From the NCBI RefSeq assembly GCF_021028975.2, contig NC_059425.1:84878001-84942000 (forward strand): a DNA stretch of 64,000 nucleotides, read 5' to 3'. The position numbers and the translations under genes were made by a program. This DNA is from Sphaerodactylus townsendi. Taxonomy: Eukaryota. Below the pieces are notes generated by a model. That model saw only the letters and a program-made list of their open reading frames with translations, ran no database searches and had not been told where the DNA came from. Numbering within the stretch: position 1 is the first letter of the stretch; the number at the start of each line of letters is the position of its first letter. Shown here piece by piece: positions 4,532 through 25,434 of this stretch.

Positions 4532-5207
4532 CAGCCAAAAGCAGGTCGACGGTCAACATCTACAACTGCTCATGGAAGGTCTACGTCAGGTGGTGCCATC
4601 GCAAACGGCTTGACCCCACGGAACCATCCATCACCGTTATCTTGGAATTCCTGCAACAGGGCTACTCAATGGGACTCAAGTGTTCCACCTTGCGCAGACA
4701 ATTGGCAGCTCTTGCTACCGTTATCCCTTGTGTGGGCGACATCCACATCACCAGACATCCGGACGTTCTGAACTTCCTAAGAGGGGTAAAATTGTCCCAA
4801 CCTGCGGTGGTCCACAGGTTTCCCTCTTGGCGCCTGAACGCTGTCCTATCAGCACTCACTAGGCCCCCGTTCGAACCCATACAAACGGTACACATCAAAT
4901 GGGTAAGAATGAAAACGCTATTCTTAATTGCAATAACGTCGGCCAGAAGAGTGGCTGAACTTCGCGCCCTTTCAATAAACTCAAAATTCTGCGTGTTCCA
5001 TAAGGATAGGGTATGTCTTCGTACAGATCCAACTTTCATTCCGAAGGTTAACTCCCCTTTCCACGTGCGCCAGGAGATCGTTGTTCCCAACTTCATGCCG
5101 AACCCTTCTCATCCCAAAGAGAAATCGTGGCACACATTGGACGCGCGACGTGCCTTAAAAGCATACATAATAAGAACGGAGGAGTTCCGAAAATCAGAAA
5201 TTATGTT
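2650..5207 (+). CDS. DIRS tyrosine recombinase ORF (recognisable domain from about 4465; truncated by the gap)
   Basis: LFLIAITSARRVAEL (catalytic Arg box) and FIPKV. The N-terminal ~600 codons overlap pol in another frame. Confidence 0.88.
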
Positions 5208-5296
5208 NNNNNNNNNNNNNNNNNNNNNNNNNNNNNNNNNNNNNNNNNNNNNNNNNNNNNNNNNNNNNNNNNNNNNNNNNNNNNNNNNNNNNNNNN
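5208..5296. other. Assembly gap
   Basis: N run. Confidence 1.
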
Positions 5297-5353
5297 AATT
5301 TGAAATTCTAGAAGTACATTAAGTGTTGATGTTGTAATTGTTTTTGATTACAG

Positions 5354-5424
5354 GTAAACAAGTCAGAACCAAACTCTCTCAAGCCTTTAATCACTGGCTG
5401 AATGTTCCTGAAGATAAACTTCAG
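5354..5424 (+). CDS. GGPS1: GGPS1 duplicate copy, exon 3 (71 nt)
   Basis: ttacag|GTAAACAAGTCAGAACC...CTTCAG|gtaatt, encoding (G)KQVRTKLSQAFNHWLNVPEDKLQ. Identical to the minus-strand exon 3. Confidence 0.92.
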
Positions 5425-5544
5425 GTAATTCATGATCTTCACTTTGTGTCTTTTTAATAGAATTTATATTCCTTTATAAATGTTTACATGAATATTGACG
5501 TGATGTTTACGTGAATATTGACTCTAACATTTTCTATATTAGTA

Positions 5545-6031
5545 CTGCTCAATAATTGGTGTTAACCTTTAAGGCTGTGAGCGGTCTTGGGCCTGCATAC
5601 CTACAGGACCGCCTCTCCCCGTAGTGCCCCATTAGATCTCTCCGGTCATTTGGAGGGAAACTTCCTGGAGATCCCTGGCCCGAAAGATGTCTGGCTACAA
5701 GGGCCAGGGCCTTCTCAGCCCTAGCCCCTACCTGGTGGAACAAGCTCCCCGGTGAATTCAGGGCCCTGCAGGACTTGAACAGAGCTTTTCCACCAGGCAT
5801 TTCCATCTAGCCAGCCAGCTGGCCTGACCAGTACTATCATTGGCCTCCCATGGGTGCAGTAAGTGGGGGTTGGGGGAGGGATTTTTCACCATCTATTATT
5901 GGTGTTTTAAGTACTGTACTGTTGGTTATTTTATTATTGTATTTGGATTCTGTATTGTTGCCGCCCTGGGCCCTGTTGGGGAGGGCGGCATATAATTAAA
6001 AATATAAATAAATAAATATAAATAAATAAAT
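5545..6031 (+). mobile_element. L2-type LINE 3' fragment with (TAAA)n tail
   Basis: Remnant peptide LVLTFKAVSGLGPAYLQDRLSP, followed by a 3' UTR and aataaataaa repeats. Confidence 0.7.
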
Positions 6032-6531
6032 ACAGAACCTTTATTCAGTATTTGATGCATATGCTAAGCAGTCTAAAGTACTACATAGCCAGTTGACACA
6101 GATCTGCACGTCAGAAGGTACACTAAAAGGATCACAAACTTAAACAGAATAAGGATAAAATTATTCATAGTAATTTACAAGCAATCTATGGTTGCTCATA
6201 GCAACTAGGAAATACCCAGCAACTTGATAAGAATTCTAGTCAGATAAAACTTGTAATACCAATACATCTGAATGACCCTGGTATTTATGAAGTAGGAGAC
6301 TAATTATGGAGTTCATTAACTAAGTATAAAAGCTGCATTATAGCAAGAAGGCAGATAGAAACCCAAATATTTCTTGTGATAGGATAGTTTTCAGATCTGG
6401 CATAAAGGATTGCTGAAGGCCGGAGGTTGAACCTGGAGAGCATAAAAGCTCCTCACGACTTGTGGAGAGCAAAGATGAGATAGGTAAGGAGCCACACGTG
6501 TAAATGCAGGCATTTGTAACAACTGTGCAAA

Positions 6532-6900
6532 TCAGGGGTGTAGCTAGGGAAAATGGAGCCCGGGGCAAAATCTGAGTTTTGCGCCCCCCCCATGGGCAGC
6601 CACCCTCCCCCCCATGACCAAAGGCCACCCTCCCGCACTACAACCAAAGAACGATTTTATGCACCAGCTCATCTCAAAGCCACCATCACATAGAACATGT
6701 CTTCACTCACAAATCTGAACACAGCAATGTATCATAGCACACAGCAGAGATTAAAATTTTGGACAACATTCTCAAAATGCTCTCAAAATATTTAATAACT
6801 GTTATAACACTTAAAAGTATTTCAAGTGTCATATGACTTAAAATGCTTTCAAAATGTTTTATTACTGCTGTTAATAACGTTTTATTACCCTCCACGTTCC
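6532..6900. mobile_element. Non-autonomous DNA-transposon-like repeat fragment
   Basis: Starts CAGGGGTGTAGCT with a tttgcgcccccc motif that recurs in related termini at about 12050, 26400 and 60530. Confidence 0.4.
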
Positions 6901-6907
6901 TTTGCAT

Positions 6908-9900
6908 TTAGAATAGAATCTTTATTGGCCAAGTGTGATTGGACACACAAGGAATTTGTCTCCGGTGCATATGCTCTCAGTGTACATAAAAGAAAATACA
7001 TTTGTCAAGAATCATAAGGTACAGCACTTAATGATTGTCATATAGGTCTAGTAAGCAATCAGGAAACAATCAATAGTAATAAAAACATAAAATGTAAAAT
7101 CATAAAATAAAATGAAATGTCAGCACAGGCTATAGTCATACAGTCATAATTGGGAGGAGATGGGTAATAGGAATGATGAAAAAAGTAGTGCAGTAATTAT
7201 ATAATAAATATATAATAAATAGTTTGACATTATCGAGGGAATTATTTGTTTAACAGAGTGATGGCATTTGGGAAAAAACTGTTCTTATGTCTAGTTGTCT
7301 TGGTGTGCAGTGCTCTGTAGCGACGTTTAGAGGGTAAGAGTTGAAACAGTTTATGTCCAGGATGCGAGGGGTCAGTAAATATTTTCACAGCCCTTTTTTT
7401 GACCCGTGCAGTATACAGGTCCTCAATGGAAGGCAGGTTAGCAGCAATTGTTTTTTCTGCAGTTCTGATTATTCTCTGAAGTCTGTGTCGATCTTGTTGG
7501 GTTGCAGAACCAAACCACACAGTTATAGAGGTGCAGATGACAGACTCAATGATTCCTCTGTAGAACTGTATCAGCAGCTCCTTGGGCAGTTTGAGCTTCC
7601 TGAGTTGGCGCAGAAAGAACATTCTTTGTTGTGCTTTTTTAATGACATTTTTGATATTAGGTGACCATTTTAGGTCATGAGATATGATGGAGCCTAGAAA
7701 TTTAAAGGTCTCTACTGTTGATACTGTGTTGTCTAGTATTGTGAGAGGAGGTAGGATGGGAGGGTTTCTCCTGAAATCTACCACCATTTCTACGGTTTTA
7801 AGTGTGTTCAGTTCTAGATTGTTCCAGTGGCACCACGAGGCTAGTTGTTCAACCTCCCGTCTGTATGCGGTTTCATCGTTGTCTCGAATGAGACCAATCA
7901 CTGTTGTATCATCTGCAAATTTCAGTATTTTAACAGATGGATCATTTGAGATGCAGTCATTGGTATACAGAGAGAAGAGAAGTGGTGAAAGTACACAGCC
8001 TTGGGGGGCCCCTGTGCTGTTTACCGGAGTGTCACGTTAAATTTTCCTAACTTCATCTGCTGAACCTATCTCATTGGGAAGCTTGTGATCCACGTACAAA
8101 TATGCTCAGGTACTGCTTCGAGATTTAGGAGTTTGGTTAGAAGAATATCCGGTCTGGAAATGAAATTGTTAGATACTGAACTGAAGTCAACAAAGAAGAG
8201 GACCCTTGCAAATTCTTTGGCGATTCAAGATACCGCCAGGATATAGTGCAAAGTTACCGAAATATGTAACAACATGCTCCAATACCGATCTATTTGCCTG
8301 GAGCCATGCAAATTGCACCGAAAGTTAACAATTGGATCCGTGATGGTTTTCAAAATGAGACATTTGTCGCCTAATACCTTCAAAAGTTTTCGCAACCTAC
8401 AGATGAAAGAACAACTGGTGTGATAGATTCGGTTCCACCCGGTGGGAAGGCTGGGCGCAAAGACGATATTGGAGTGTTTGAAGCAGGAAGGGCATAGCAC
8501 ATCTCTAGTGATTTGTTCAAGATTTGGGTGAGGATAGAGTAGTGGACGCGCACAGACACTATGAGGCAAGAAAGGGTGTCCATCATGTCAGTTTCTGGTG
8601 CTTTTCCAGGCTTCACCAATGTGAAATAAGATCTTGCACTTACGCTGCTCTAGGGTCGCCAGAGTTCGTAAACCCATTGATAGAAGTGGTTCAGTTATAG
8701 GAGAGTTTAGCTATTGTTGGTGCATCCTGAGATGGAGGTTGTGGAGAAAGTGGGCTATAGATTGTTTTCAAACCCTACAGTAGAACACGTTACTGGTTAT
8801 CTGCGCCGAATTGCTTTGATTTCACTTCAGCTTGGGAAGGTGGTTTACTGTAACGGTGTTGATATTTTTTGAGAGTTTTCCACATGTGTTACTGTTTTAC
8901 GTTTAAGGTAGAAAACTAGATTTTTTAAGCTTTTCAGAGAGTAGTTTCTTTTTTGCTTTCCTCCTGAGTCCTCCTACCTGTTAATACATTTCTGGCCTGA
9001 TTGTACAGCGATTCTATCACACCCCTTTCTGTATGGGCACTGCTTCTTTGCGAGCGACGTAACTGCCAAGTTTAGAAAACTGTGAACCAAGGTTTGTTGT
9101 TACTATATACCGCATAGAAGTTCACTGGTTGAGTATACAAAGATGCTTCACCAGAAGCTGACATATGATGTTACAGTATCTGTGAGTTCATCCAAATCTG
9201 CAGAGGTGTAAATTTGCAGAAAATAATTCCAGTCTGTACAGTCAAAGGCAAGAGCCTGCAGCTTTAACTGCTTGCCTCTTCAGTCAAGTTCTCACTGATT
9301 TAGTTATTGGTTTTGTGGCTTTAAATCTTTTGTTTTGTAAAGCAGGTACAAAGGTGAATCATGCAATGATCAGAATGGCCTACAAAGCTGCTTTCAAATT
9401 GGTAAAGACCCGGGATATATGCATCGCTTCCAGTTAATTTGTATAGCAGTGGTACCGAATAAGATCATTCTTGCACTCTGGTGGGACAAGATTGACATGC
9501 TGAGAAGTATTTTGGTAGAGAATCTTCCCTTAAGTTTTGCTTTGTTTTAAATCTTTCTCCCCAAAATAATAACCAAGTGAATCAGAGGGTATGTTGGCTT
9601 CAGCCTCCATAATCTGAGTCGGTTAGAGGTTCTTAATGCCTTTTTTACAGATGCTTGTGGATGAATATAAACCAAAAAAAACCAGAACTGAATTTATCTC
9701 TCGAGGGGAATAAAAGAGGGTTTGCAATTAATAAGTAAGGACTCCAAATTTTCATCACATGGAATTTTTGAATTATTGTTATGTCTTGACACCAGCTTTT
9801 TTGTTGATGTATATACATAATCCTCCTCCTTTTTCTGTCCCTGATAATTCTGCAATCCTGTCTGAGCAGAAATATCTGAAACCCGGGTAATTGCACGCAT

Positions 9901-10470
9901 GCTATTTATCATCAATGCTCCTCCATTTAAGCCAGGTTTACAAAGATAAAAAGCATAGGGCAGATGCGTTGTAAAATCAGAATTGCATCTGTTTAAAAGA
10001 AGTATTTCATCTATCCTTACGTTGGCCAGAAGTGAGGCATAAAGTTGGTAAAGAAAAGATTGCTTGGAAGGGAGGCGGGGTTTTAAATTCCCCTTATTCC
10101 TTAGTCTATTTAAAATTCCCGCCCTTTTACCTCTTAGGTCTCTGCCATACCATGCTTGTTTTTGCCTTTGATCTCTGGCCCGTTGCCGGGAAATGGCTGC
10201 CTTCTGTGCTGAAATTTCCTCCATGGTTGTAAAGATCTGTTGTTGCCGGGAAATGGCTGCCTCCTGTGCTGAAATTTCCTCCGTGGTTGTAAAGACAGAT
10301 AGGGGTAAAGTTGCAGAGAGCCACTCCTTAAGGAAACGTTCCCTAATTCTTAGCAGATGGTCTCTGGAGTATGAAATTCGTTGTAAATTGCAGGAAATAG
10401 TAGAAAATGTAGAAGCCATTTGAGAGCATTCCACCGAGGCAGCCCTCGTCGGCGCCATCTTGGGTTGGAT
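6908..10470 (-). mobile_element. Rex1/Babar-like LINE, near full length (APE + RT), frameshifted in the middle
   Basis: RT C-terminus KFADDTTVIGLI...FFPNAITLLNK (7242-8020). 3' end is aataaagattctattcta. 5' end is near ccaagatggcgcc. Endonuclease remnants at about 9300-10050. Confidence 0.85.
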
Positions 10471-12329
10471 GAGAGACTGCTGCTGCTGCTGCTGCTGGCA
10501 GCTCAGCGGTCCCATTTCTCCCAAGCACTGCCAGAAATAATAGCCAATTTGGATTAATATCAAACCTGCCCAAATAAGCCACAGTACAAGCCAGCCTGGA
10601 TTTCTCTCTCTTCCTCTGAATGCCTATTTCACACTTGGACAGGAGGATGCTCTAGAAAGAGTAATTTCTGTATGCTCTATCAAACTTATTAGGATAAAGA
10701 TATATAGGCAAGATAAAGAATGATGCTAGGCACAGAGTTGGGTCCCACAGAACCCATATTTCACTTGGTAGAAAAATGTTCCAAAAATTTAAAAAATGGA
10801 TAAAATCCTAAAAATGCAATTTAGAACCCTTATTAACTAATTAAAAGTAACAGTTTTGATAGTTGTATGCTATCAAAATATGCCAAGACACTCCAGAATA
10901 CAACTCCACAGGTAGACCAGACTACATAGTACCATTCTAATCACAGCAACCCAAACATACATGCAGACAACAGAATTAATTCCAAGCACTTCAAAGATGT
11001 AATGGTTACTCTGATGGTTACAAGAAAACAATATATATTGTGTAGAGGACAGTACCAGTATTTGGCACACATGAATTGTTCACATTTTTGTAATACACAT
11101 AAAATATTATTTCAGTGCTGTATTGTTTATTATAGCAACCACCTTTTATATAAATTCAGAGAGGGTTGGATCCAAGCTTTCTGCAAACTATCTCAGTTCA
11201 CTTTTGTACAAAAGGTCTTTGCTATTTATTTCTCTTTGCAGTTTGGCCTCTGCTCCCCCCCTCCCCCCAGCCACTCCAGAATGTCAGAGGAATGCCAGGA
11301 ATAGAATGAGATGTGGCATGGGGGATTGCTTCCACAAGGAAAAATCAGCAGTAATCTCCTCTTACATGAGCTTTCCCTTTGCTCATATAATGGGTGCTCA
11401 AAGTGGGGGAGGATTTCTGCCATCTCCCCCTCTTCAAACAGGAAGTCGCCACAAGAGTGCTTCTGGGACTGAAGCATCCCACAAAGCACACAAAAGATTT
11501 TAGTTTTTACTTTCATGGAGGGAAGAAGGTCATCTTTTAAAACTTACCAGGGCAGTTTTGAGAAGGGCATGCTGCCTGCAAGATCTGTTCTCCCAGCTAG
11601 CTCCATCCCAGCCCTTTCGTCAGTATTCTAGCCCATCCCCTTCATGAGGCAAAACTGAAACTAAAAGGAGCCAATGAGAAGAAGGCTCATTTGCATACAG
11701 GCTCTGATGTCACTGGGGGACAGTTTGGAGGAAAAATCCTTTTGGGGGGCAGAAAGGGATGAGGGCAAATGATAAAAGAGAGATTTTCAGATGCCCTGAA
11801 GATACTGGGAAACTATAAAATGAAATTAGAACTCACCATAACTGGGAAGGTTCACTGCTAGTGGAGACTTAAATACCCAGCTGATCAAATTTTTAAAAAT
11901 ACGTAGAGAAAAGGACAGCCTGCCAGAGCAGGCAAGGAGGACAACGAAGGAGGACGGGGATGACGATGACGAGCAGGCAAGGATGATGACAATGGGAGAG
12001 GGAGGGCGCAATTGGAGGGGGCGGGGAGGAGGGAGGTGATCTACTGATTTTGCGCCCCCCACGTGACTCCCACGGAGTGCGCCCGGGTCATTTGTCCCCG
12101 GATGTCCCCATGGGAGCTTCGCCACTGGTGCAAATGCACAGCAGAGTACAAAATACATCTGTGTCAAACTGTTTTCCAAAAACAATTGAATATTTCAAGT
12201 TTTCAAATAGTGCTGTATAACTTTTGAAATTATTTGGAGATCAATGTGAAGGCTTCTACCTGCTGCTATCTGAGCAAGAAAACTTTTATTGCAGTTGAAC
12301 ATAAATCCATTTATGAGGTACAAGTGCCA

Positions 12330-13315
12330 CAACCCTTAGGTCAAGAACAGGCTAGCCACACATACTGTCAAGAGTGCTTTGTGCAAGAACGCTCCTGGTA
12401 TGGGTAGTTAACAGAACAAATTACAAAACACTGAGGTATAAATATTCAAGCCTCAGCTAGGTAGCTGCCACCAGTTCCTTTGGTCTACCTCACAGCCAGA
12501 AACCAAGGGACAATCTTCTGGCCCTCCTGCAACTAAAATCAAGAAAGTTACCCTTGCAAGGTAGCATACTTACAAGGCGAGTTTCAGAAAACAGTTATTT
12601 TGGTAGCTTTAGCCAATCCAGACCAAAGGATTGGGTTCAGATTGAAGCCTCTTGAATTCAAAAACACCACAAAATATAATTAGAGATTTATTAAAATTGT
12701 GCAAGGAATTTGAACAAAACAACAGTGAGGACTGAAAATAAAAACTCTAATTGAAAAGACTAACTACACAATTATAGGCATTGATTCTAATACAAGATGT
12801 TACCACAAAGTCTTTCTTACAATCCAGGTTTTTCTCAATCCAGTCCAGGATAAGTTCAGGTTTCCAGTCATTAGGACTCACCCACAAGACAGGCTCAAAA
12901 CAAGTACCCAGAATAAGGAACTTGGAACAAAATTATGATGAAGAATCTGAGCTATATTCCCAGAGACGTGAATTGGCGTGATCTTGGTTAGCCAATCAGG
13001 TGTATCGTTGATGATGTCAATTAACCATGGTGGCCTTTTGTTGGCCATGTGGCCAAGGGGTCAGAGGAATTTGATGTAACTGGACCCTCTGCAGCTAAGT
13101 CCAGCTCCCATCTACAAAGGCTGTTATCCCACTATGATCTCAGTCTGTTAGTTAGATAATGCATTTTCTCAGACCTGGTGTCCTTTGGATTAGATTACGG
13201 ATGAAGATGTACTCTTTGCACCTACCTCTCTTAACTAAGTTTCCACAAGTAAGTAACCTGCTGAGTTTCAACCAGGAAATTTTCCATGTTAGCTAAGCCA
13301 CAGCCTGGACCAGTG
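12330..13315 (-). mobile_element. Possible solo LTR
   Basis: Composition shift with CCAAT boxes and a minus-strand AATAAA at about 12686. Termini and TSD not established. Confidence 0.25.
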
Positions 13316-14621
13316 TTTGAAAGAAACAAGTACTGCATTAAGGACATCAGTTTCTTTGTACAGACACCTAAGAGATGTAACATTTTCAAAAATATTGAGG
13401 CCACAGAAGAAAATTGTGGGAAAGGACTGGAAAATTAAGATGTCTGCTGTACTTATCAAGCTTCAACTTGTTTGCTGCTTTAATAAAATGCATCTAACTT
13501 AGCATTTAAAAATACACTTTGCATATTTATGAGACTCATATAAGAATAAATGACTGATTTTTCTACAGCCAAATTGTAAATACAGCAACATTTTATAATA
13601 CCTGTTTTAGTTTTTGCTATGCGATAGGTCATAAAACATAAAAACCAAAAATAGAAAACATTAATTTGATAATGAGCAAAAGCGTCATTTCAACAAAGGC
13701 TGATTTAATCACAATAAGAGTAGCAACAATATGAATGTCAAGTAAATTTAATTGAAAACATTTGTTCCTTCAGTAATGTTATATATCATAGATGGTTAAG
13801 TAAATGAATGCCAGCAAACACATCAAGAGGTGCCAAGGGACACCACATGGGGCTTTGTGCTATAGCACAATAGTCCCCAACTTTTTTGAGCTTGCAGGCT
13901 CTTTTGCAATTCTAAGACAGGGTGGTGGGCGCAACTATGAAATGCCTGCCGCAGGAGGCACAGCTAACTGCAAATTGTTGGAGAGTGAGGTTATGTATAA
14001 CAGCAAGTCTTCCACATTTTGAGTAGAAGTTTGGCTTAACAAAATGCTTTTTAAATTAACATTTTTTAAGAAATATTTTTCTGCATATACACAGTTTACC
14101 TTCATTCATACAGTGAAGATCCTTGTTCTGTGGTGCCGGCTGATATCAACACTTGTTTTTTGAATTTGTATAACATATGGGAAGCCCTGCTAGGAAAGAT
14201 CAAATCTGGTCCCATCCACTTTCTAAAAACACTTGGTGGGCGCTAGGAAAGGTATTGGTTGGTACCACATTAGGACACCTGTGGCAGCACATATGATAAA
14301 TCTTTGTATTTAGAGCAGGTTGGTAGCAAGTACAGGTAAAGGCTAGCCACAAGGCCCTGACAATATGTATAGACCCAAAGTCTAATATGTACATGCCTCA
14401 ATGAAAGGAACTGTGAGAAGGATGAAGTGGCAAGCAGCCTGGGTCTGACACAGGTTGAAGCAGGTAAGAGACATCCAAAAAATAGCTCAGCTCTAACTAA
14501 AGGGCTTACTCTCACTTAACATTTTTTATTTGGAGAGCAAAATAAATAATCCCTGTCAAGTGTGAAATGTCTGTGTATAAAATTGAAATACTGAACTTAC
14601 TCTTGTTTTTTCTTCCTTTAG

Positions 14622-15383
14622 GTTATAATTGAAGTGACAGAAATGTTGCACAATGCTAGCTTACTTATAGATGACATAGAAGATAATTCAAAGCTTCGAC
14701 GAGGTTTTCCAGTGGCTCACAGTATCTATGGAATACCATCTGTAATAAATTGTGCAAATTTTGTGTATTTTCTTGGCTTGGAGAAGGTTTTAACACTTGA
14801 TCATACAGATGCTGTAGCTGTATTTACTCGCCAGCTGTTGGAGCTCCATAAAGGCCAAGGCCTGGATGTTTACTGGAGAGATACTTACACCTGTCCCACA
14901 GAAGCAGAATATAAAACCATGGTTCTGCAAAAGACAGGTGGCCTTTTTGGACTAGCTGTGGGCCTCATGCAGTTGTTCTCTAACTACAAAAAAGATTTAA
15001 AACCACTTCTTAACACCCTTGGGCTCCTCTTTCAAATTAGAGATGACTATGCAAACTTGTACTCCAAAGAATATAGTGAGAACAAAAGTTTTTGTGAAGA
15101 CTTAACCGAAGGGAAATTCTCATTCCCGACTATCCATGCCACACGGTCCAGGCCAGAAAGCACACAGGTGCAGAATATCCTGCGACAGAGGACTGAAAAT
15201 GTAGATATAAAAAAATACTGTGTACATTACCTTGAGAGTGTGGGTTCCTTTGAATATACACGAAAAACCTTAAAACAACTTGAGTCTGAAGCTTATAGAC
15301 AGATTGAATCTCTTGGGGGAAACCCGGAGCTTGTAGCATTAGTTGAACATTTAAGCAAAATGTTCAAGGAGAATGAAAACTGA
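14622..15383 (+). CDS. GGPS1: GGPS1 duplicate copy, exon 4 (codons 48-300), open frame
   Basis: Polypyrimidine tract and ttag acceptor. FARM DDIED..RRG, KT motif (QKTGG) and SARM QIRDDYAN are present; stop TGA. Confidence 0.93.
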   Translation, partial: VIIEVTEMLHNASLLIDDIEDNSKLRRGFPVAHSIYGIPSVINCANFVYFLGLEKVLTLDHTDAVAVFTRQLLELHKGQGLDVYWRDTYTCPTEAEYKTMVLQKTGGLFGLAVGLMQLFSNYKKDLKPLLNTLGLLFQIRDDYANLYSKEYSENKSFCEDLTEGKFSFPTIHATRSRPESTQVQNILRQRTENVDIKKYCVHYLESVGSFEYTRKTLKQLESEAYRQIESLGGNPELVALVEHLSKMFKENEN

Positions 15384-16213
15384 AACCAGTTGTCAGGCAC
15401 ATGACTGGAATCATTTTATAATTCCTTCCATTGATGGATAGGAACAGATCTCAAACATTTTAAGGGATAATGGTGTTTGGCTTCATCCTGGATTATCTTT
15501 GGCTTAATTTCAACTGCTCATTTAATACTGCATAAAGCTACAAATTTAAATATAGCTATCAAGTTTTACTGTAAAACTTCATTCTTAGTCCATTTCTTTT
15601 TATTGTGGATTTATTTTCATTCTGACCAAGACATGTAATCAACTTCTGAATACAAGACAGCATGGATGTTTCACCTTCAATGTTTTATTAAATTTGCATT
15701 TATCTAGTTCTGCTGTGTCCAAATACATAGTCCAGAATGTTCTCATTTCCTTTTCCATTCGCTTTGAGCCTTGGATTCATGTATGCAGTAAAACTAAAAT
15801 GATTATCAAGGTTGGGTGGGAAGAAGGTGAATTGATCCAGGGCACAAGCCCTAATGGTAGCAGACACCACCACCCCCCCACATAAAAATCTGATACGTGG
15901 TCTTGAATGCCTTAGCTTTGATGCAGGGGTTCCATGGAGCGGGGGAGAGTTTGCTGTTTTTCTCCCTATCTATAGCTTGCTGAAAAGAACTCTGGAACTT
16001 TAACTGGCCCCTCCACAATGATTTTAGGGAGCATGGGGGGATTGACGGAAAGCTGGTAATTTGGAGCCTTTCTTACACAGTATGATCTCTGCACACACGC
16101 CCAGGATAAAAGACAGGCTAGAAAGATGTGGAAATCGATTGGGGGGGGGGGGGTGTTTCAAATATGTTTCAAGCTAATGGTTATCTCATTGCAGTGAAAC
16201 TATACTGCAGTAA

Positions 16214-16416
16214 CTGGTTCTGGTGGGTTTACTGGCTGTGGTCTGGTGAATTTTGTTCCTAACGTTTCGCCTGCATCTGTGGCTGGCATCTTCAGAGGTG
16301 TATCACAGAGAAAAGTCTGTTTCACACTGTGTCTAAGTGAGAAGGGAAAGTTTAATGTGGTATATTGTCCATGTCTCAGGGTGGGGAACCAATCATTAAG
16401 TGTTTGGGTGGAACTT
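16214..16416 (-). mobile_element. Penelope-like element remnant
   Basis: The same motif family occurs at 21283, 52962 and 61349, and it carries a hammerhead-type core. Confidence 0.7.
16256..16300 (-). ncRNA. Minimal type I hammerhead ribozyme motif
   Basis: Minus strand reads cct-CTGAAGA-tgcc-agccacagatgca-ggc-GAAA-CG-TT-agg. This gives the CUGANGA and GAAA core, stem II gcc/ggc, a palindromic stem III (AACGTT) and stem I cct/agg. Confidence 0.72.
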
Positions 16417-17504
16417 GCAGTAAAATTATGCTGCAGTAAAATTATCCTGAAACTTATTGGAGGTAAAGAATTTAGGACTTAAACATATTTCAGGATGGTT
16501 GATTTCCAGAATGTTTCCTTGAGTATTTGTAAGGCTGTCCCTCTTGGCTGAAGATAGCATGATTTTAGGGAGCATGGGGGGATTGACGGAAAGCCGGTAA
16601 TTTGGACCCCTTCTTACACAGTATGATCTCTGCACACATGCCCAGGATAAAAGGCAGGCTAGAAAGGTGTGGAAATCGATTGTGGGTTATTCAAATACTT
16701 TTCAAGCTAATGGTTATCTCATTGCAGTGAAACTATACTGCAGTAAAATTATCCTGAATCTTATTGGAGGTAAAGAATTCAGAACGTAGGCATCTTTCAG
16801 GCTGGATGAGTTCCAGAATGTTTCCTTGAGTATTTGTAAGGCTGTCCCTCTTGGCTGAAGATGGGAATTATAGGGCACAAAAATATTGGGGATGAGTAAG
16901 GTAAATACAGGCTGAGTTACACGGGATTTTCTGTGTAGCTGAAGTGTGGCTTTAAGCTTGGGTATAAAATGCCTTCTTGCTTTAGCTCAGTTTGGATTTT
17001 TTTATAATTTTTACAATTACTTTCAGGCATATAGAATAGTAGGTAAAGATCAGAAGCAACTTCACCCATCCCCTTCACCTGCTTGCCATTATCTAACAGA
17101 ACCTCTGGAACAGACTTGCCACCAGAAATTACTGCCAGTCCCACAAAATCCCTTGCCTGTCTTGTGCTTTAGTCTGTGAGCCTGAAGATATGGACCTGTT
17201 TGTCTTATTTGTGTGCATCACCCAGTATGTTTTTTTAAAAAGATAGGTCATGCAGGCAGTGGTGGGATTCAAATAATTTAACGACCGGTTTCCAGCCCTA
17301 ATGATCGTTTTAAGTATAAAAAAGATATACAGAAAGGTAGTTGATTACTTAAATAATACTTAATGCACATGTATCCTCCTGATTTTTGCACTGTCATACC
17401 AAAATCACCAGCACAGCACAATTCCAGCCATTAGCCACATGTCTGAACATAACAATCACACATCCCATGCTTCGTGGTGCCATAGTGGCACAAAAACCTG
17501 CTTG

Positions 17505-17670
17505 ACATAAGAAGAACATAAAAACAAGCCTGCTGGATCAGACCAGAGTCCATCTAGTCCAGCACTCTGCTACTCGCAGTGGCCCACCAGGTGCCTTTGG
17601 GAACTCACACGCAGGATGTGAAAGCAATGGCCTGCAGCAGCTGCTGCTGCTGAGCACCTGGTCTGCTAAG
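17505..17670 (-). mobile_element. CR1-type LINE 3' end
   Basis: acataagaagaacata...ctgctggatcagaccagagtccatctagtccagca, similar in reverse to 62550-62590. Confidence 0.55.
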
Positions 17671-18699
17671 GCCAGACAAACATGGATCCTTGTGGATCCT
17701 CATGATTTTTTCACTTGGGCACCCCCAAATCACCTGCACATCACACCTCATACCTCTAGACACATGTCTGAACACAATCCTGCATCCCATGCTCCGTGGG
17801 ACAAAAATGTGGTTAAAACACATGGATCTTCCTGATTTTTCCACTTGGTCACCCCAAAATCACCAGCACAACACAGCACAACACATATTTTAAAACTCTC
17901 TTATAACATAATCTAGTTTTATTGTTCTTATTTACGTATTATTTAAGTAATAAACTACCTTTCTGTATATCTTTTTTATACTTAAAACACTCATTAGAGC
18001 TGCAAACAGGTCATTAAATTATTTGAATCCCACCACTGGAAGTTTGGAACCGGTTGTTAAATTATTTGGATCCCACCACTGATCCTAATCCATCACTACA
18101 ATGGATTAAGATTTGTCTAATCTGGGTAAAATGTGAGCACACACATTACTGCTTACTAAGAATGCTTTATTACACAGTGGGAAGAGGCATTGCATTGAAT
18201 AGCAGAACTGCCATAACATAACTGAATAGCAGAACTGCCATAACATGGCAACCTGCAAATTACTGCAAAAATCCATTCTGCAGATTTGTACACAACAGTC
18301 AAGTGAGAATATTCCACAACAGATAAAAATTAATGGTTGAAAAAGCAGTCACCACTTTCTTGTTGCAATAAGTGGCTCCAGAAAAAAATATCTCCTTGCT
18401 ATAGTTCAGGATACTTGGGTCCTCTCCAACAAAAGATGATACTTGGACATCAATTTTTGACCACTGTGGAGTACCCATGCTGCTTTCATGATGGAAGGAT
18501 ACTTGGCTCCAAGCCTCCTAACATTTTGTGGAACCTCTCAACGTTTTGTGACCAAACAAGGCCCCATGTCAGCCATTCTGTGACTGGTCTTGCATCTCCC
18601 AGGGCAGCCATTTGCTGCAGCAACCTCTACCTGTCCTGTTCTCAAAGTGCCCACAGGTTCAAAAAGGTTGAGGAACTGCCCCTTGGATCCCCTTATGTG

Positions 18700-20030
18700 G
18701 CTGCATTTTTATTCAGACGCAACAGCTAAAGCTGAGCAGCACCTGCGTTGTGCTGTGTCTTCGTAACGAAGCATTATATGGAAATAGAAATTCGACACAG
18801 ACGTCACCTGGGGAACTTCTGCCTAGAAAAGCCGTTAGCCAGTCAAAGAGTAGCAATTTCAAAGGGAGACAGCTGGCTACGTACCCAGCGCCAGAAGAGC
18901 AAAAAATCCGAGTGGTATATGACAATACTGGGCTCTAAAAGGCATGTGCAAAAACAGTAGGAAGGAAACGGATCCCAGAGGGTGTTGCTGTGCGTCGCCG
19001 CTGTCACGACTGAAATGGACAGCGGGACACAAGACGCTCCAAAGTGACGGCAGGCTTCACAAAACCGGCCAGTCCGAGAGGCAAGGAAGCAACGAGTCGG
19101 TTTATTTTAAACACGGCGGAGAAATACGTTCAGGGAGCTAGCTGCTGCTGTATAAAAATAAACCTTTAAATATTATTTTAAAAAGATCACCCGTCATCTT
19201 ACGTTTAGTCAAGATTTTTGCACGCACGCCCGACAAAAACAAACCACTCACTCCTTTCTTCCCTGAAACTCTCCAGTCGAAATCCTCGAAAACGTTTTTG
19301 CCAAGGATGCCAAAGTCCGGAAAATTATAACCCATCACGCCGCACAAAGTGTTGCAAGACTGCAGGGAAGCGGAGGCATGGCCGTAGAGGCCAGCATAAG
19401 AAACCGACAACAACGTGGCTAAAGACGTGGGAAGCGACGGCGTAATACCCGCTCTCGATTAGCGGGAGGTGCTAAAACGACCTGCCCGGTTGCAGGGCGG
19501 GGCTCTACGATTATTATTCCCTTCTGCCAGTCCTTGGTCCCTCCCCTTATCCATCTCTCCGCATAGCCAAAGAAAGCGCGAGCTGTACGGGTACTCTCTC
19601 TCCCTAGCCGCAATTACCTCTGTTCCTGGGGCTGTGTCGCTCCCGTAGTCTTAATAATGACGTCACCTTCTATTGTTCTTGGGACTTCCACGCATGCGTT
19701 AGTTTGAGCACACCTACCTTCCTTCCTTTCCCAAGTGGGCGGGCTTTTAGAGCCACGTCACCTTTTCCGTGGACTATTTTCAATTGGCCTCGTCCAAACG
19801 TTCTGCCTTCCTCTTGGTGCACTTATTGTCACAATAGCTCTCTAGAAAGGAGATACTGCGGGCCGCAGAGGCTTACGGGTAGCAGGTTACAAAGGCGGAG
19901 GAAAAAATCCCAAACATTTTGGTGCAAACGGCCGGAGTTAAAGAGACTGGAGGGGAGACAGTAGAGTAGCTCACGCCCCCAAATTTCCGATTTTGTTTAG
20001 GTCAGATCGCGTTCTTTTGGCGTGTCATGA
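18700..20030. promoter_or_regulatory. CpG-rich promoter-like region in the palindrome spacer (candidate TBCE promoter/first exon)
   Basis: High CpG. GC box gggcgggg at about 19495, CRE TGACGTCA at 19658, NRF1-like CGCATGCG at 19691, CCAAT. Minus-strand donor GAG|GTAATT at about 19617. TBCE is suggested only from amniote synteny. Confidence 0.6.
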
Positions 20031-21282
20031 AGGCAGCTGTGATACTTTAGATAAAGCAAAACAGCTGACAACATTGGACAGCTTTTTCATGTATTTTTGG
20101 AAACTCAACACACTACAGGCTACTTCGAATTTTGACAGTAGCAAACAAATGGTTGGCCAATGCGTTGTGTAACATGTCTCAGTTTATTCCATTTAATGTC
20201 CCAGTTTATTCCATTATTTGATACTTAGATTATAGACTTATAACAGTAAGACACAACGGCAAACTAACTCTGAATATCTCGTACCCTAAATCCGCTACAA
20301 TTTCACAACCAAATAATAATTCAAAAAACTCTTGCCCACATAAGCTTTTGGACTACTTGTAGATCCTTTCTCAAAAAATGTTTAGTAGGTGGGTATGATA
20401 GTCTATGGAGTAGCATGCTCATCCCCAGAATCCGGATCATTTTCATAATCAATATAGGTAGGACTATTTTATTACATTTCATTTTGTCCTTCCATTTCTG
20501 CAGAGACTGCTTATGACAGGTGTAATATTTATCTCCCCCCACCCCCATAATCTAGTTTTGTGTACCTCTTTTTATTGTCTTATTTAAGTATTAAGTATTA
20601 TTTAAGTAATCAACTACCTTTCTGTATGTCTTTTTTTATACTTAAAACGATTATTAGGGCTGCAAACTGGTCATTAAATTATTTGAATCCCACCACTGGA
20701 AGTTCCAAACTGGTTGTTAAATTATTTGAATTCCACCATTGCCTGCATGTTCTTTCTTTTTTTAAAATCTACCTAATACATACTGGGTGATGCACACAAA
20801 TAAGACAAACAGGTCCATATCTTCAGGCTCACAGACTAAAGCACAAGACAGGCAAGGGATTTTGTGGGACAGGCAGTAATTTCTGGTGGCAAGTCTGTTC
20901 CAGAGGTTCTGGTAGATCATGGCAAACAGGTGGAGGGGATGAGTGAAGTTGCTTCTGATTTTTACCTACTATTCTAGATGCCTGAAAGTATTTGTCAAAA
21001 TTATAAAAAATGCAAACTGAGCTAAGGCAAAAAGGCATTTTATACCCAAGTTTAAAGCCACACTTCAGCTACACAGAAAATCCCGTGTAACTCAGCCTGT
21101 GTTTACCTTACTCAACCCCAGTATTTTTGTGCCCTATAATTCTTATCTTCAGCCAAGAGGGACAGCCTTACAAATACTCAAGGAAACATTCTGGAACTCA
21201 TCCAGCCTGAAAGATGCCTATGTTCTGAATGCTTTACCTCCAATAAGTTTCAGGATAATTTCACTGCAGCATAATTTTACTT

Positions 21283-21495
21283 TAAGTTCCACCCAAACAC
21301 TTAATGATTGGTTCCCCACCCTGAGACATGGACAATATACCACATTAAACTTTCCCTTCTCACTTAGACACAGTGTGAAACAGACTTTTCTCTGTGATAC
21401 ACCTCTGAAGATGCCAGCCACAGATGCAGGCGAAACATTACGAACAAAATTCACCAGACCACGGCCACACAGCCCGGTAAACCCACCAGAACTAG
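21283..21495 (+). mobile_element. Penelope-like remnant with a mutated hammerhead motif
   Basis: cctCTGAAGAtgcc...ggcGAAAcattacg at 21402-21442. Stems III and I are mutated relative to the left-arm copy. Confidence 0.7.
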
Positions 21496-22333
21496 TTACT
21501 GCAGTATAGTTTCACTGCAATGAGATAACCATTAGCTTGAAACATATTTGAAACACTAATCGATTTCCACATCTTTCTAGCCTGTCTTTTATCCTGGGCA
21601 TGTGTGCAGAGATCATACTGTGTAAGAAAGGCTCCAAATTACTGGCTTTCCATCAATCCCCTCATGCTCCCTAAAATCATTGTGGAGGGGCCAGTTAAAA
21701 TTCCAAAGTTCTTTTCAGCAAGCTATAGATAGGGAGAAAAACAGCAAACTCTCCCCCGCTCCATGGAACCCCTGCATCAAAGCTAAGGCATTCAAGACCA
21801 CGTATCAGATTTTTATGTGGGGTGGTGGTGGTGGTGGTTCTGGTTCTTGGTGTCTGCTACCATTAGGGCTTGTGCCCTGGATCAATTCACCTTCTTCCCA
21901 CCCAACCTTGATAATCATTTTGGTTTTACAGCATACATGAATCCAAGGCTCAAAGCGAATGGAAAAGGAAATGAGAACATTTTGGACTATGTATTTGGAC
22001 ACAGCAGAACTAGATAAATGCAAATTTAATAAAACATTGAAGGTGAAACTTCCATGCCGTCTTGTATTCAGAAATTGATTACATGTCTTGGTCAGAATGA
22101 AAATAAATCCACAATAAAAAGAAATGGACTAAGAATGAAGTTTTACAGTAAAACTTGATAGCTATATTTAAATTTGTAGCTTTATGCAGTATTAAATGAG
22201 CAGTTGAAATTAAGCCAAAGATAATCCAGGATGAAGCCAAACACCATTATCCCTTAAAATGTTTGAGATCTGTTCCTATCCATCAATGGAAGGAATTATA
22301 AAATGATTCCAGTCATGTGCCTGACAACTGGTT

Positions 22334-23095
22334 TCAGTTTTCATTCTCCTTGAACATTTTGCTTAAATGTTCAACTAATGCTACAAGCTCCGGGTTTCCC
22401 CCAAGAGATTCAATCTGTCTATAAGCTTCAGACTCAAGTTGTTTTAAGGTTTTTCGTGTATATTCAAAGGAACCCACACTCTCAAGGTAATGTACACAGT
22501 ATTTTTTTATATCTACATTTTCAGTCCTCTGTCGCAGGATATTCTGAACTTGTGTGCTTTCTGGCCTGGACCATATGGCATGGATAGTCGGGAATGAGAA
22601 TTTCCCTTCGGTTAAGTCTTCACAAAAACTTTTGTTCTCACTATATTCTTTGGAGTGCAAGTTTGCATAGTCATCTCTAATTTGAAAGAGGAGCCCAAGG
22701 GTGTTAAGAAGTGGTTTTAAATCTTTTTTGAAGTTAGAGAACAACTGCATGAGGCCCACAGCTAGTCCAAAAAGGCCACCTGTCTTTTGCAGAACCATGG
22801 TTTTATATTCTGCTTCTGTGGGGCAGGTGTAAGTATCTCTCCAGTAAATATCCAGGCCTTGGCCTTTATGGAGCTCCAACAGCTGGCGAGTAAATACAGC
22901 TACAGCATCTGTATGATCAAGTGTTAAAACCTTCTCCAAGCCAAGAAAATACACAAAATTTGCACAATTTATTACAGATGGTATTCCATAGATACTGTGA
23001 GCCACTGGAAAACCTCGTCGAAGCTTTGAATTATCTTCTATGTCATCTATAAGTAAGCTAGCATTGTGCAACATTTCTGTCACTTCAATTATAAC
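22334..23095 (-). CDS. GGPS1: GGPS1 exon 4 (codons 48-300)
   Basis: DDIED and DDYAN motifs, canonical acceptor. Exon lengths 70+71+762 = 903 nt = 300 aa plus stop. Confidence 0.97.
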   Translation of the reverse strand, partial: VIIEVTEMLHNASLLIDDIEDNSKLRRGFPVAHSIYGIPSVINCANFVYFLGLEKVLTLDHTDAVAVFTRQLLELHKGQGLDIYWRDTYTCPTEAEYKTMVLQKTGGLFGLAVGLMQLFSNFKKDLKPLLNTLGLLFQIRDDYANLHSKEYSENKSFCEDLTEGKFSFPTIHAIWSRPESTQVQNILRQRTENVDIKKYCVHYLESVGSFEYTRKTLKQLESEAYRQIESLGGNPELVALVEHLSKMFKENEN

Positions 23096-23474
23096 CTAAA
23101 GGAAGAAAAAACAAGAGTAAGTTCAGTATTTCAATTTTATACACAGACATTTCACACTTGACAGAGGGATTATTTATTTTGCTCTCCAAATAAAAAATGT
23201 TAAGTGAGAGTAAAACCTTTAATTAGAGCTGAGCTATTTTGGGGATGTCTCTTACCTGCTTCAACCTGTATCAGACCCAGGCTGCTTGCCACTTAATACT
23301 TCAGACAGTTCCTTTCACTGAGGCATGTACATTTTAGACTTTGGGTCTATACATATTGTCAGGGCCTTGTGGCTAGCCTTTACTTTTACTTGAGGCGCTT
23401 TTATGCTCTCCAGGTTTAACCTTCTGCCTTCAGCAATACTTTATGCCAGATTTGAATACCTATCACAAGAAATA

Positions 23475-24264
23475 ACGTATACTCACATATAAGTCGAATT
23501 TTTCAGCACATTTTTTATGCTGAAAAAGCCCCCCTCGACTTATACGCGAGCAAGGTGTATTGTAAAAAACATTTTAGGGTTTTTACTTTGTCGGCCGCCA
23601 TGGGGCACAGTTTTTAGGCTAGCGGCACCAAAATTTCAGGGATTTTTCAAGAGACTCTCCTGATGATACCACCCAAGTTTGGTAAAGTTTGGTTCAGGGG
23701 TCCAAAGTTATGGACCCCCAAAGGAGGTGCCCCATCCCCCATTGTTTCCAATGGGAGCTAATAGTAGATGGGGCTACATTTTGAGGGTCCATAACTTTGG
23801 ACCCCTTGAACCAAACTTCACCAAACCTGGGTGGTATCATCAGGAGGGTCTCCTAAAGATACTTGGAAATGTTGGTACTGTTAACATAAACATTCCTCCC
23901 CTGATCAAAAATCCAGTTTTGAAGGATTTTAACTCTTGTGTTTTAGCTTGGTTGCTGATTGAGCCAAGGTTTTTGTACTTTTAAAGTTATTGTTGAGACC
24001 CTATTGTTTTTGTTGACCCTCTTTTCCACTTACAGAGCTAGTTTACTGTTTTTCTTTGAAATAAATATTCAAAAACATTTAACCTACTGATGCCTCAATT
24101 AATGTAATTTTATTGGTATCTATTTTTATTTTTGAAATTTACCAGTTGCTGCTGCATTTCCCACCCTCGATTTATATGCGAGTCAATACGTTTTCCCAGT
24201 TTTCTGTGGTAAAATTAAGTGCCTCTACTTATATGTGGGTCGACTTATACACAAGTATATACAG
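23475..24264. mobile_element. Tc1/mariner-type MITE present only in the right arm
   Basis: TIRs cgtatactcacatataagtcga / tcgacttatacacaagtatatac. The left arm shows the empty site at about 6367. There is an internal palindromic segment at about 23640-23850. Confidence 0.75.
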
Positions 24265-24599
24265 GTTTTTTGGGTTTCTATCTCCCTTGTTATAATGCAG
24301 CTTTTATACTTAGTTAATGAACTCCATAATTATTCTCTTACTTCATAAATATCAGGGTCATTCAGATGTATTGGTATTACAAGTTTTATCTGACTAGAAT
24401 TCTTATCAATTTGCTGGGTATTTCCTAGTTGGTCTGAGCAACCATAGATTGCTTGTAAATTACTATGAATAATTTTATCCTTATTCTGTTTAAGTTTGTG
24501 ATCCTTTTAGTGTACCTTCTGACATGCAGATCTGTGTCAACTGGCTATGTAGTACTTTAGACTGCTTAGCATATGCATCAAATACTTAATAAAGGTTCT

Positions 24600-25085
24600 G
24601 TATTTATTTATTTATATTTATTTATTTATATTTTTAATTATATGCCGCCCTCCCCAACAGGGCCCAGGGCGGCAACAATACAGAATCCAAATATAATAAT
24701 AAAATAACCAACAGTACAGTACTTAAAACACCAATAATAGATGGTGAAAAATCCCTCCCCCAACCCCCACTTACTGCACCCATGGGAGGCCAATGATAGT
24801 ACTGGTCAGGCCAGCTGGCTGGCTAGATGGAAATGCCTGGTGGAAAAGCTCTGTTCAAGTCCTGCAGGGCCCTGATTTCACCGGGGAGCTTGTTCCACCA
24901 GGTAGGGGCTAGGGCTGAGAAGGCCCTGGCCCTTGTAGCCAGACATCTTTCGGGCCAGGGATCTCCAGGAAGTTTCCCTCCAAATGACCGGAGAGATCTA
25001 ATGGGGCACTACGGGGAGAGGCGGTCCTGTAGGTATGCAGGCCCAAGACCGCTCACAGCCTTAAAGGTTAACACCAATTATTGAG
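24600..25085 (-). mobile_element. L2-type LINE 3' fragment (mirror of 5545-6031)
   Basis: Near-identical reverse complement of the left-arm copy. Confidence 0.7.
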
Positions 25086-25208
25086 CAGTACTAATACAGA
25101 AAATGTTAGAGTCAATATTCACGTAAACATCACGTCAATATTCATGTAAACATTTATAAAGGAATATAAATTCTATTAAAAAGACACAAAGTGAAGATCA
25201 TGAATTAC

Positions 25209-25279
25209 CTGAAGTTTATCTTCAGGAACATTCAGCCAGTGATTAAAGGCTTGAGAGAGTTTGGTTCTGACTTGTTTAC
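25209..25279 (-). CDS. GGPS1: GGPS1 exon 3 (71 nt)
   Basis: cag|GTAAACAAG...CTTCAG|gtaatt on the minus strand; phase fits exons 2 and 4. Confidence 0.96.
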
Positions 25280-25343
25280 CTGTAATTAAAAACAATTACA
25301 ACATCAACACTTAATGTACTTCTAGAATTTCAAATTTAACTGC

Positions 25344-25434
25344 NNNNNNNNNNNNNNNNNNNNNNNNNNNNNNNNNNNNNNNNNNNNNNNNNNNNNNNNN
25401 NNNNNNNNNNNNNNNNNNNNNNNNNNNNNNNNNN
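25344..25434. other. Assembly gap
   Basis: N run. Confidence 1.

What the first reader, a model, noticed from the sequence alone, without database searches (positions are those of the whole stretch)
5297..25343. GGPS1 palindrome: two convergent, open-frame copies of the catalytic exons
Seen: exons 3-4, the 3' UTR and about 2 kb of downstream DNA occur twice, tail-to-tail around a ~3.2 kb spacer. Both copies have intact splice sites and reading frames. Known: GGPS1 is normally single copy between ARID4B and TBCE in amniotes. Inference: this is a lineage-specific inverted duplication of a core isoprenoid enzyme. Arm-specific insertions, deletions and diverged tracts make simple haplotype double-counting less likely, but do not exclude it.
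Basis: partly seen in the sequence, partly recalled or inferred. Interest (0 to 1): 0.85.

Follow-up and report, generated by a model that had tools for sequence, protein, structure and literature searches.

The report
Inverted partial GGPS1 duplicate in gecko
A gecko genome assembly carries a second, inverted copy of the last two exons of the essential enzyme gene GGPS1 next to the real gene; the copy looks like a genuine but decaying gene fragment, not a second working gene, and its placement still needs long-read proof.

Summary
The palindrome is in the sequence as described. The left arm is 5297-17364 and the right arm 20590-25343, around a 3,225-nt spacer. Each arm carries GGPS1 exons 3 and 4 with intact splice sites and frames. 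The window is Sphaerodactylus townsendi (GCA_021028975.2), a 10x Supernova, ONT gap-fill and 3D-DNA assembly.

The right arm plus spacer are collinear with Paroedura, so they are the native gene. The left arm is the derived copy. It lacks exons 1-2 and the start codon. It carries four derived amino-acid changes, three at residues invariant in 119-120 of 120 vertebrate GGPS1 proteins, and no synonymous change. The native copy has one mild replacement and three synonymous changes.

The arms differ by 2.4% overall (0.75-5.2% by segment), with mismatch-free runs of 472 and 362 nt (P=0.0004). Each arm also has its own indel block.

Arm-specific contigs of both arms occur in two samples of the species and in a run from a separate study. 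No contig bridges arm to spacer, and both outer arm ends abut N gaps.

Verdict: probably a real lineage-specific partial inverted duplication, an unprocessed pseudogene, with gene conversion between arms. An assembly artefact is not excluded. Interest is low to moderate.

The parts
1018..5207 (+). DIRS-like retroelement abutting the left gap. It has a gag-like ORF, an RT/RNase H ORF and a third long ORF cut by the N run.
   Evidence: ORFs. Pfam hits LAP2alpha, RVT_1 and RT_RNaseH. No similarity to the far side of the palindrome.
5208..5296 (.). N run (89) at the outer end of the left arm. Left untouched.
5297..6455 (+). Left arm, outer segment: 57 nt of intron 2, the exon 3 copy (5354-5424) and the start of intron 3. 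Its first 1 kb is 97-99.5% identical to the right arm.
6456..14326 (+). Left-arm-only block inside intron 3. It holds LINE fragments (RT tail ORF 7242-7901, minus strand). It also holds 12128-12259, which matches Paroedura intron 3, so part of the block is ancestral DNA that the right arm has lost.
14327..17364 (+). Left arm, inner segment: the end of intron 3, the exon 4 copy (14622-15383, annotated in the public record as a 246-aa protein starting at 14643), a 3' UTR-like block and about 2 kb of downstream DNA. It ends inside a repeat copy.
17365..20589 (-). Spacer: native DNA downstream of GGPS1, collinear with Paroedura in the right arm's orientation. High-copy repeats occupy 17365-18269 and unique DNA 18270-20589. 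A CpG island lies at about 18750-20000, with a conserved promoter-like block and a conserved GT donor at 19617 on the minus strand.
20590..25343 (-). Right arm, the 3' part of the native GGPS1 gene: downstream DNA, exon 4 (22334-23095), intron 3 with a right-only 794-nt block (23475-24268), exon 3 (25209-25279) and 64 nt of intron 2.
25344..25434 (.). N run (91) at the outer end of the right arm, inside GGPS1 intron 2. Left untouched.
27226..27295 (-). The single-copy GGPS1 exon that holds the start codon (70 coding nt, GT donor). It serves only the right-arm copy.

Best explanation
This is a real inverted partial duplication of the 3' half of GGPS1, specific to Sphaerodactylus. The duplicated stretch runs from intron 2 to about 1.7 kb past the stop codon. 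The native gene is the right arm on the minus strand, completed by exon 2 at 27.2 kb. It continues into the spacer, which carries the CpG-island promoter and first exon of the next gene downstream, probably TBCE. The left arm is the copy, placed tail to tail 3.2 kb beyond the native arm end, apparently inside intron 1 of that downstream gene. The copy has no start codon, no exons 1-2 and no promoter of its own. It has begun to decay at the protein level, so it is an unprocessed pseudogene fragment whose frame is still open only because it is young. The patchy identity between arms is best explained by gene conversion between palindrome arms. Shown: the anatomy, which arm is native, the relaxed constraint on the copy, and the presence of both arm types in several read sets. 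Inferred: that the arms are adjacent on one molecule, the gene conversion, and the identity of the downstream gene.
For: The right arm plus spacer are collinear with Paroedura DNA downstream of GGPS1: positions 1513-1563 and 3285-3480 past the stop map to 20522-20467 and 19794-19602. Paroedura and Zootoca loci have one GGPS1 and no inverted repeat. Exon 4 was polarised with Paroedura. The left copy has I83V, H147Y, I174T and W175R and no synonymous change. The right copy has Y122F at a variable site and three synonymous changes. The left copy departs from three of the 136 near-invariant exon-4 residues and the right copy from none. Left-only 12128-12259 matches Paroedura intron 3, so both arms changed independently. 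Contigs specific to the left arm (16559-16840, 16926-17126) and to the right arm (20715-21081) have 0-3 differences (0 in X3) in runs X1 and X3, two samples. Both types also occur in X5, from another study. Their depths are roughly those of the 2.4-kb spacer contig: in X1, left 67-103, spacer 73, right 108-154; in X3, left 24-36, spacer 41, right 30-48. Identity between arms is heterogeneous, with mismatch-free runs of 472 and 362 nt at a mean divergence of 2.38% (permutation P=0.0004). The inner breakpoint is sharp and lies inside a repeat copy that continues further in the native arm.
Against: No read or contig links either arm's unique DNA to the unique spacer. High-copy repeats at 17088-18269 and 20591-20830 break every contig. 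Both outer arm ends stop at N gaps at homologous positions. The assembly was built from Supernova pseudohaplotypes, gap-filled with about 6.5 Gb of ONT reads, and had no haplotig purge within scaffolds. Other first-stage notes report large palindromes elsewhere in this assembly, one centred on a gap. Contig depth is a poor measure of copy number, as the tool itself warns. In X3 the left arm is at 0.6-0.9 of the spacer's depth. Organism C (X6) shows only one sequence type over the inner arm, a mosaic of left and right states, so the duplication cannot be shown to be shared between species. Polishing with multi-mapping short reads could also create identical tracts.
Confidence: 0.55

Rival explanations
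1. False heterotype duplication. The two arms are the two haplotypes of one locus in the sequenced male, and the assembler laid the second haplotype down in reverse beyond the spacer.
For: Gaps flank both arms at the same homologous point. The assembly pipeline had no within-scaffold purge. The left junction runs through about 0.9 kb of high-copy repeats, where a wrong path is easy. Mean arm divergence is only 2.4%. Other palindromes have been reported in this assembly. Gaps and such divergence fit the published hallmarks of false duplications (PMC9516828).
Against: Both arm types are present in a second sample and in a run from another study. Arm contigs are not at half the spacer's depth (weak evidence). 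There is no gap between the duplicates. One 'allele' of an essential single-copy enzyme would carry I174T and W175R at residues invariant across 120 vertebrates. Local divergence reaches 5% and there are kb-scale structural differences. An inverted placement inside one contig is not the usual form of this error.
Confidence: 0.2
2. The second partial copy is real but lies elsewhere or in another orientation. The join to the spacer at 17364|17365 is a misassembly through repeats.
For: The junction lies inside a high-copy repeat family and is followed by more high-copy repeats up to 18269. The outer end of the copy is a gap followed by a mobile element.
Against: Linked-read barcodes and Hi-C placed it here. 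The sequence from 5297 to 25343 has no N. ONT gap filling needs reads that anchor on both sides. Nothing positive points to another location.
Confidence: 0.12
3. The left copy is a working gene. It would give an N-terminally truncated 246-aa GGPS1 as annotated, or a chimeric transcript using foreign 5' exons, under new or relaxed selection.
For: The frame is open, the splice sites are intact, and both Asp-rich motifs (DDIED and DDYAN) are kept. A public annotation calls a 246-aa protein there.
Against: There is no start codon before residue 55, no exons 1-2 and no promoter. There are four replacements and no silent change, three of them at invariant residues, two adjacent. At about 1% divergence an open frame is expected by chance. 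No RNA run holds the stretch. The annotated model is a bare single-exon coding range.
Confidence: 0.05

Closest known systems
Unprocessed (duplicated) partial pseudogenes arising from segmental duplication
   Same: It is a genomic copy with introns that holds only part of the parent gene. It lacks the promoter and first exons, lies next to the parent, and shows relaxed protein constraint.
   Different: It has no disabling stop or frameshift yet. It is inverted and forms a palindrome with the parent, rather than a tandem or dispersed copy.
Large palindromes with arm-to-arm gene conversion, as on primate sex chromosomes (from my own knowledge, not tested here)
   Same: It has inverted arms around a unique spacer. 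Long identical tracts are interspersed with diverged ones, which suggests conversion.
   Different: The arms are short (about 4-12 kb) and much less alike (95-100%, with kb-scale indels). It is probably autosomal, though the chromosome's identity was not tested. It holds one truncated gene copy, not an amplified gene family.
False heterotype duplications in vertebrate assemblies (Ko et al. 2022, PMC9516828)
   Same: A gene-bearing duplicate lies beside its source in a linked-read assembly, gaps are nearby, and a spurious '-like' gene model results.
   Different: The gaps are outside the duplicates, not between them. Contig depth is not halved. Both types recur in other samples. The orientation is inverted.
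Inverted-repeat pseudogene loci that give hairpin or antisense RNA against the parent gene, such as mouse oocyte endo-siRNA loci and fly hpRNA genes (from my own knowledge)
   Same: An inverted copy of parent exons lies where a neighbouring promoter, or read-through from the parent, would transcribe it as antisense.
   Different: No RNA evidence of any kind was available here. This is a geometric possibility only.

Membership tests
Functional GGPS1 paralogue (polyprenyl synthetase, PF00348) | Complete coding sequence with a start codon and the N-terminal helices (exons 1-2) | tested here: not met
   The exon holding the ATG occurs once, at 27226-27295, and serves the right arm. The left arm begins 57 nt before exon 3, and its first in-frame Met lies in exon 4.
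Functional GGPS1 paralogue (polyprenyl synthetase, PF00348) | Both Asp-rich catalytic motifs present | tested here: met
   DDIED and DDYAN are intact in both copies. The Pfam hit has E=9e-63, and the alignment to 2Q80 has E=9e-152.
Functional GGPS1 paralogue (polyprenyl synthetase, PF00348) | Purifying selection on the copy | tested here: not met
   The left lineage has 4 replacements and 0 silent changes, three at residues invariant in 119-120 of 120 vertebrates. The right lineage has 1 replacement and 3 silent changes. The counts are small (Fisher one-sided P=0.07).
Functional GGPS1 paralogue (polyprenyl synthetase, PF00348) | Expression | not testable with these tools
   No RNA run holds the stretch.
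False heterotype (haplotype) duplication | Half read depth on each copy | tested here: inconclusive
   Only contig word depths were available. Arm-to-spacer ratios are about 0.9-2.1 in X1 and 0.6-1.2 in X3. They are mostly not one half, but adjacent contigs differ by a factor of about 1.5.
False heterotype (haplotype) duplication | An assembly gap between the two copies | tested here: not met
   There is no N between 5297 and 25343. The gaps lie at the outer ends of the arms.
False heterotype (haplotype) duplication | The second type is absent or segregating in other individuals | tested here: not met
   Left-specific and right-specific contigs are both present in X1, X3 and X5, which come from three samples and two studies. 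The sample is small.
Genomic palindrome maintained by gene conversion | Inverted arms around a unique spacer on one DNA molecule | tested here: inconclusive
   The structure is present in the assembled sequence. No contig bridges an arm and the unique spacer.
Genomic palindrome maintained by gene conversion | Identity tracts longer than uniform divergence allows | tested here: met
   Mismatch-free runs of 472 and 362 nt occur against a permutation mean of 209 (P=0.0004). Constraint on the exon and UTR, or polishing, could contribute.

The most novel reading that the evidence does not exclude
The palindrome is real and acts as a regulator. The CpG-island promoter in the spacer, probably TBCE's, transcribes leftwards through the left arm. 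Its pre-mRNA would then carry about 1.3 kb of 99% antisense to GGPS1 exon 4 and its 3' UTR. Read-through from GGPS1 would likewise fold into a long hairpin. Either could yield double-stranded RNA, editing or small RNAs that couple GGPS1 output to the neighbouring gene. Gene conversion would keep the arms complementary.
Probability: 0.04. Interest if true: 0.6.

Novelty: new member of a known kind. Interest (0 to 1): 0.22.

Why it matters
If real, this is one more young segmental duplication. It gives a datable example of an autosomal palindrome with conversion tracts in a squamate, and it shows that the annotated 246-aa 'GGPS1' protein of this species is best treated as a pseudogene fragment in gene-family counts. 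If it is an artefact, it is a worked example of a false gene gain in a linked-read assembly. Either way the practical message is caution: GGPS1 should not be counted as duplicated in Sphaerodactylus on this evidence.

Tried and rejected
- **Read evidence.** All ten listed runs were kept as contigs only, and I laid four of them. None of the listed contigs bridges 17364|17365 or reaches more than 18 nt past 20589|20590, because high-copy repeats sit there. The joints listed by the tool are other genomic copies of those repeats, not evidence about this locus. Depth figures are per contig and noisy, so I use them only as weak evidence.
- **Cross-species dating with organism C (X6).** Its contigs over the inner arm look like one sequence type. 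It carries the right arm's indel states and is somewhat closer to the left arm in substitutions. This fits either a single copy or two homogenised copies, so I rejected it as evidence either way.
- **Extending the view to the left of the window.** The aim was to see whether TBCE or a second copy of GGPS1 exons 1-2 and ARID4B follows. The DIRS gag ORF is not on record as a gene. The findings index takes no coordinates outside the window and holds no note on TBCE or ARID4B.
- **RNA evidence.** No RNA holder was listed.
- **Exact look-up of the exon-4 products.** Only the left copy's 246-aa form is on record. It led to the genome's identity but to no independent contigs.
- **Literature.** No paper links GGPS1 and geckos. 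I found no description of inverted-duplication artefacts specific to Supernova.
- **Spliced model.** Exons were searched apart by reference, and only their summed length (903 nt, 300 codons plus stop) was computed.
- **N runs.** They were not filled.
Full report
**Observation**

The window holds a clear inverted repeat.
- The left arm runs 5297-6455 and 14327-17364 on the plus strand.
- The right arm runs 25336-24269 and 23474-20590.
- The spacer is 17365-20589, 3,225 nt.
- The left arm has 7.87 kb that the right arm lacks (6456-14326). The right arm has 794 nt that the left arm lacks (23475-24268).
- Three N runs exist. Two of them, 5208-5296 and 25344-25434, sit exactly at the two outer arm ends. 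The DNA beyond them is unrelated: a DIRS-like retroelement on the left and GGPS1 intron 2 on the right.

I left the N runs as they are.

**Gene content**

I placed the exons one by one with GGPS1 proteins returned.
- The exon with the start codon occurs once, at 27226-27295 on the minus strand.
- Exon 3 (71 nt) occurs at 25209-25279 (-) and 5354-5424 (+).
- Exon 4 (762 nt with the stop) occurs at 22334-23095 (-) and 14622-15383 (+).
- All acceptors and donors are AG and GT, and both frames are open.
- The three exon lengths sum to 300 codons plus stop.

The native gene is therefore the right-arm copy on the minus strand. The left arm holds only exons 3 and 4. Its first in-frame methionine is in exon 4.

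**Source and assembly**

The left copy's 246-aa product from that methionine is on record. It lies on CM037614.2 of GCA_021028975.2, where it is annotated as a bare single-exon gene beside a 300-aa GGPS1. My reading, from the preprint 10.1101/2021.08.13.456260 and from memory of the accession, is that this is the Sphaerodactylus townsendi reference.

That assembly was built as follows:
- a Supernova assembly of 10x linked reads;
- Tigmint and ARCS;
- TGS-GapCloser with about 6.5 Gb of ONT reads;
- NextPolish and 3D-DNA;
- duplicate removal only for small unplaced scaffolds.

Such a pipeline can leave false haplotype duplications. Their published hallmarks are half depth, gaps between the copies, discordant linked reads and one-copy k-mers (PMC9516828). 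Other first-stage notes on this genome report further large palindromes, one centred on a gap. I did not test those notes, but they raise the prior for an artefact.

**Which arm is native**

Paroedura picta (L001) and Zootoca vivipara (L003) have ARID4B next to GGPS1, with TBCE following in Zootoca. Each has a single GGPS1 and no inverted repeat within 10 kb.

Both window arms align to Paroedura exon 3, to exon 4 with its 3' flank, and to about 1.2 kb of downstream DNA. Two further Paroedura segments, 1.5 and 3.3 kb past the stop, align inside the spacer in the right arm's orientation, at 20522-20467 and 19794-19602. So the right arm plus spacer is the ancestral arrangement, and the left arm is the added copy.

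Left-only 12128-12259 matches Paroedura intron 3. The right arm has therefore lost ancestral intron DNA since the two sequences separated. Each arm has its own history.

**State of the copy**

Exon 3 coding sequence is identical in the two arms.

Exon 4 differs at eight codons (nine nucleotide positions). Polarised with Paroedura:
- The left copy has four derived replacements (I83V, H147Y, I174T, W175R in exon-4 numbering) and no silent change.
- The right copy has one replacement at a variable site (Y122F) and three silent changes.

Among 120 vertebrate GGPS1 proteins, 136 of the 253 exon-4 residues are invariant in at least 119. The right copy departs from none of these. The left copy departs from three, two of them adjacent.

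Both Asp-rich motifs are intact.

The counts are small (Fisher one-sided P=0.07). The pattern is still that of a constrained parent and an unconstrained fragment. At about 1% divergence an open frame is expected by chance and is not evidence of function.

**Arm divergence**

Over 3,787 aligned columns there are 90 mismatches, or 2.38%. By segment:

| Segment | Divergence |
|---|---|
| Exon 3 region | 0.75% |
| First kb of intron 3 | 1.5% |
| Last 300 nt of intron 3 | 4.75% |
| Exon 4 | 1.05% |
| Next 600 nt | 1.5% |
| Inner downstream part | 3-5.2% |

Mismatch-free runs of 472 and 362 nt exceed what a uniform spread gives (P=0.0004). Part of the high identity lies in intron DNA, so constraint alone does not explain it. 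Gene conversion between arms is the simplest reading. Homogenisation by short-read polishing is an alternative I cannot exclude.

The inner breakpoint is sharp. Both arms end with the same 39 nt (38 of 39 identical), inside a copy of a repeat family. In the native arm the repeat continues beyond that point. In the left arm it is cut off and followed by other repeats.

**Independent reads**

Only Logan contigs were available. I laid 5,901 letters (16300-22200) on two samples of the species (X1, X3), on a run from a separate 2025 study labelled as another organism (X5), and on a related organism about 2-4% diverged (X6).
- Left-specific contigs (16559-16840, 16926-17126) have 0-3 differences in X1 and X3 (0 in X3).
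- Right-specific contigs (20715-21081) and the 2.4-kb unique spacer contig also have 0-2 differences in X1 and X3.
- X5 also has both arm types.

| Run | Left arm depth | Spacer depth | Right arm depth |
|---|---|---|---|
| X1 | 67-103 | 73 | 108-154 |
| X3 | 24-36 | 41 | 30-48 |

This is not the half-depth pattern. However, such depths are noisy and the tool warns against using them.

No contig bridges arm and spacer. Repeats with word depths of 10^5 to 10^7 lie at 17088-18269, and repeats of 10^3 to 10^5 at 20437-20830.

In X6 the inner arm is represented by one sequence type. It has the right arm's indel states and a mix of left and right substitutions. That fits either a single copy or two homogenised copies, so the age of the event relative to that species split stays open.

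**Spacer**

The spacer has a CpG island at about 18750-20000, with CpG observed/expected of 0.76-1.17. Inside it, 19602-19794 is conserved with Paroedura. The conserved block contains GC-box-like, NRF1-like and CRE-like motifs, followed by a conserved GT donor at 19617 on the minus strand. Zootoca has a CpG island at the equivalent place, between GGPS1 and the TBCE coding start.

I infer that this is the promoter and first exon of the downstream gene, probably TBCE. If so, the left arm and the DIRS element lie in its first intron, antisense to it. This agrees with another first-stage note on the same window, which I checked only in part.

**Verdict**

- The most likely explanation (about 0.55) is a real, lineage-specific, inverted partial duplication. 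The copy is an unprocessed pseudogene fragment, and the arms have exchanged sequence by conversion.
- A haplotype fold-back (about 0.2) or a misplaced real copy (about 0.12) remain possible. Physical linkage was not shown, and the assembly method and the flanking gaps invite such errors.
- A second working GGPS1 gene is unlikely (about 0.05).
- The thing is a new member of a known kind, and interest is low to moderate.

Noticed in passing
window 1018-5207: A DIRS-like retroelement with long open ORFs: a 527-aa gag-like ORF with a LAP2alpha domain, an RT/RNase H ORF, and a third ORF that runs into the N gap. It looks young, and it is the only thing seen beyond the left arm.
   Followed up: partly
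window 18750-20000 (core 19602-19794, donor at 19617, minus strand): A CpG island in the spacer with a promoter-like block conserved in Paroedura (GC box, NRF1-like and CRE-like motifs) and a conserved splice donor. It is probably the first exon of the downstream gene (TBCE?), pointing into the left arm.
   Followed up: partly
window 25435-26500: A GC-rich block (0.55-0.65) in GGPS1 intron 2 directly after the right N gap. It has long ORFs on both strands and internal direct repeats (25593-25672 and 25831-25910).
   Followed up: no
window 16453-16759: A left-arm-only 307-nt stretch that repeats neighbouring DNA (16018-16213 resembles 16559-16746, and 16415-16555 resembles 16722-16862, at about 90%). 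It is absent from the right arm and from organism C contigs.
   Followed up: partly
window 17482-17678 and 21225-21618: Extremely abundant repeats, with contig word depths of 10^6-10^7 in all four runs. A related copy of the second lies at 61387-61494.
   Followed up: no
window 34222-34876 and 35666-36333: A direct repeat of about 0.66 kb at 85.6% identity between the GGPS1 5' region and the ARID4B promoter region.
   Followed up: no
window 7242-7901 (minus) and 10182-10295: Within the left-only intron block there is a LINE reverse-transcriptase tail ORF (Pfam PF09004 match) and a 60-nt unit repeated 1.9 times.
   Followed up: no
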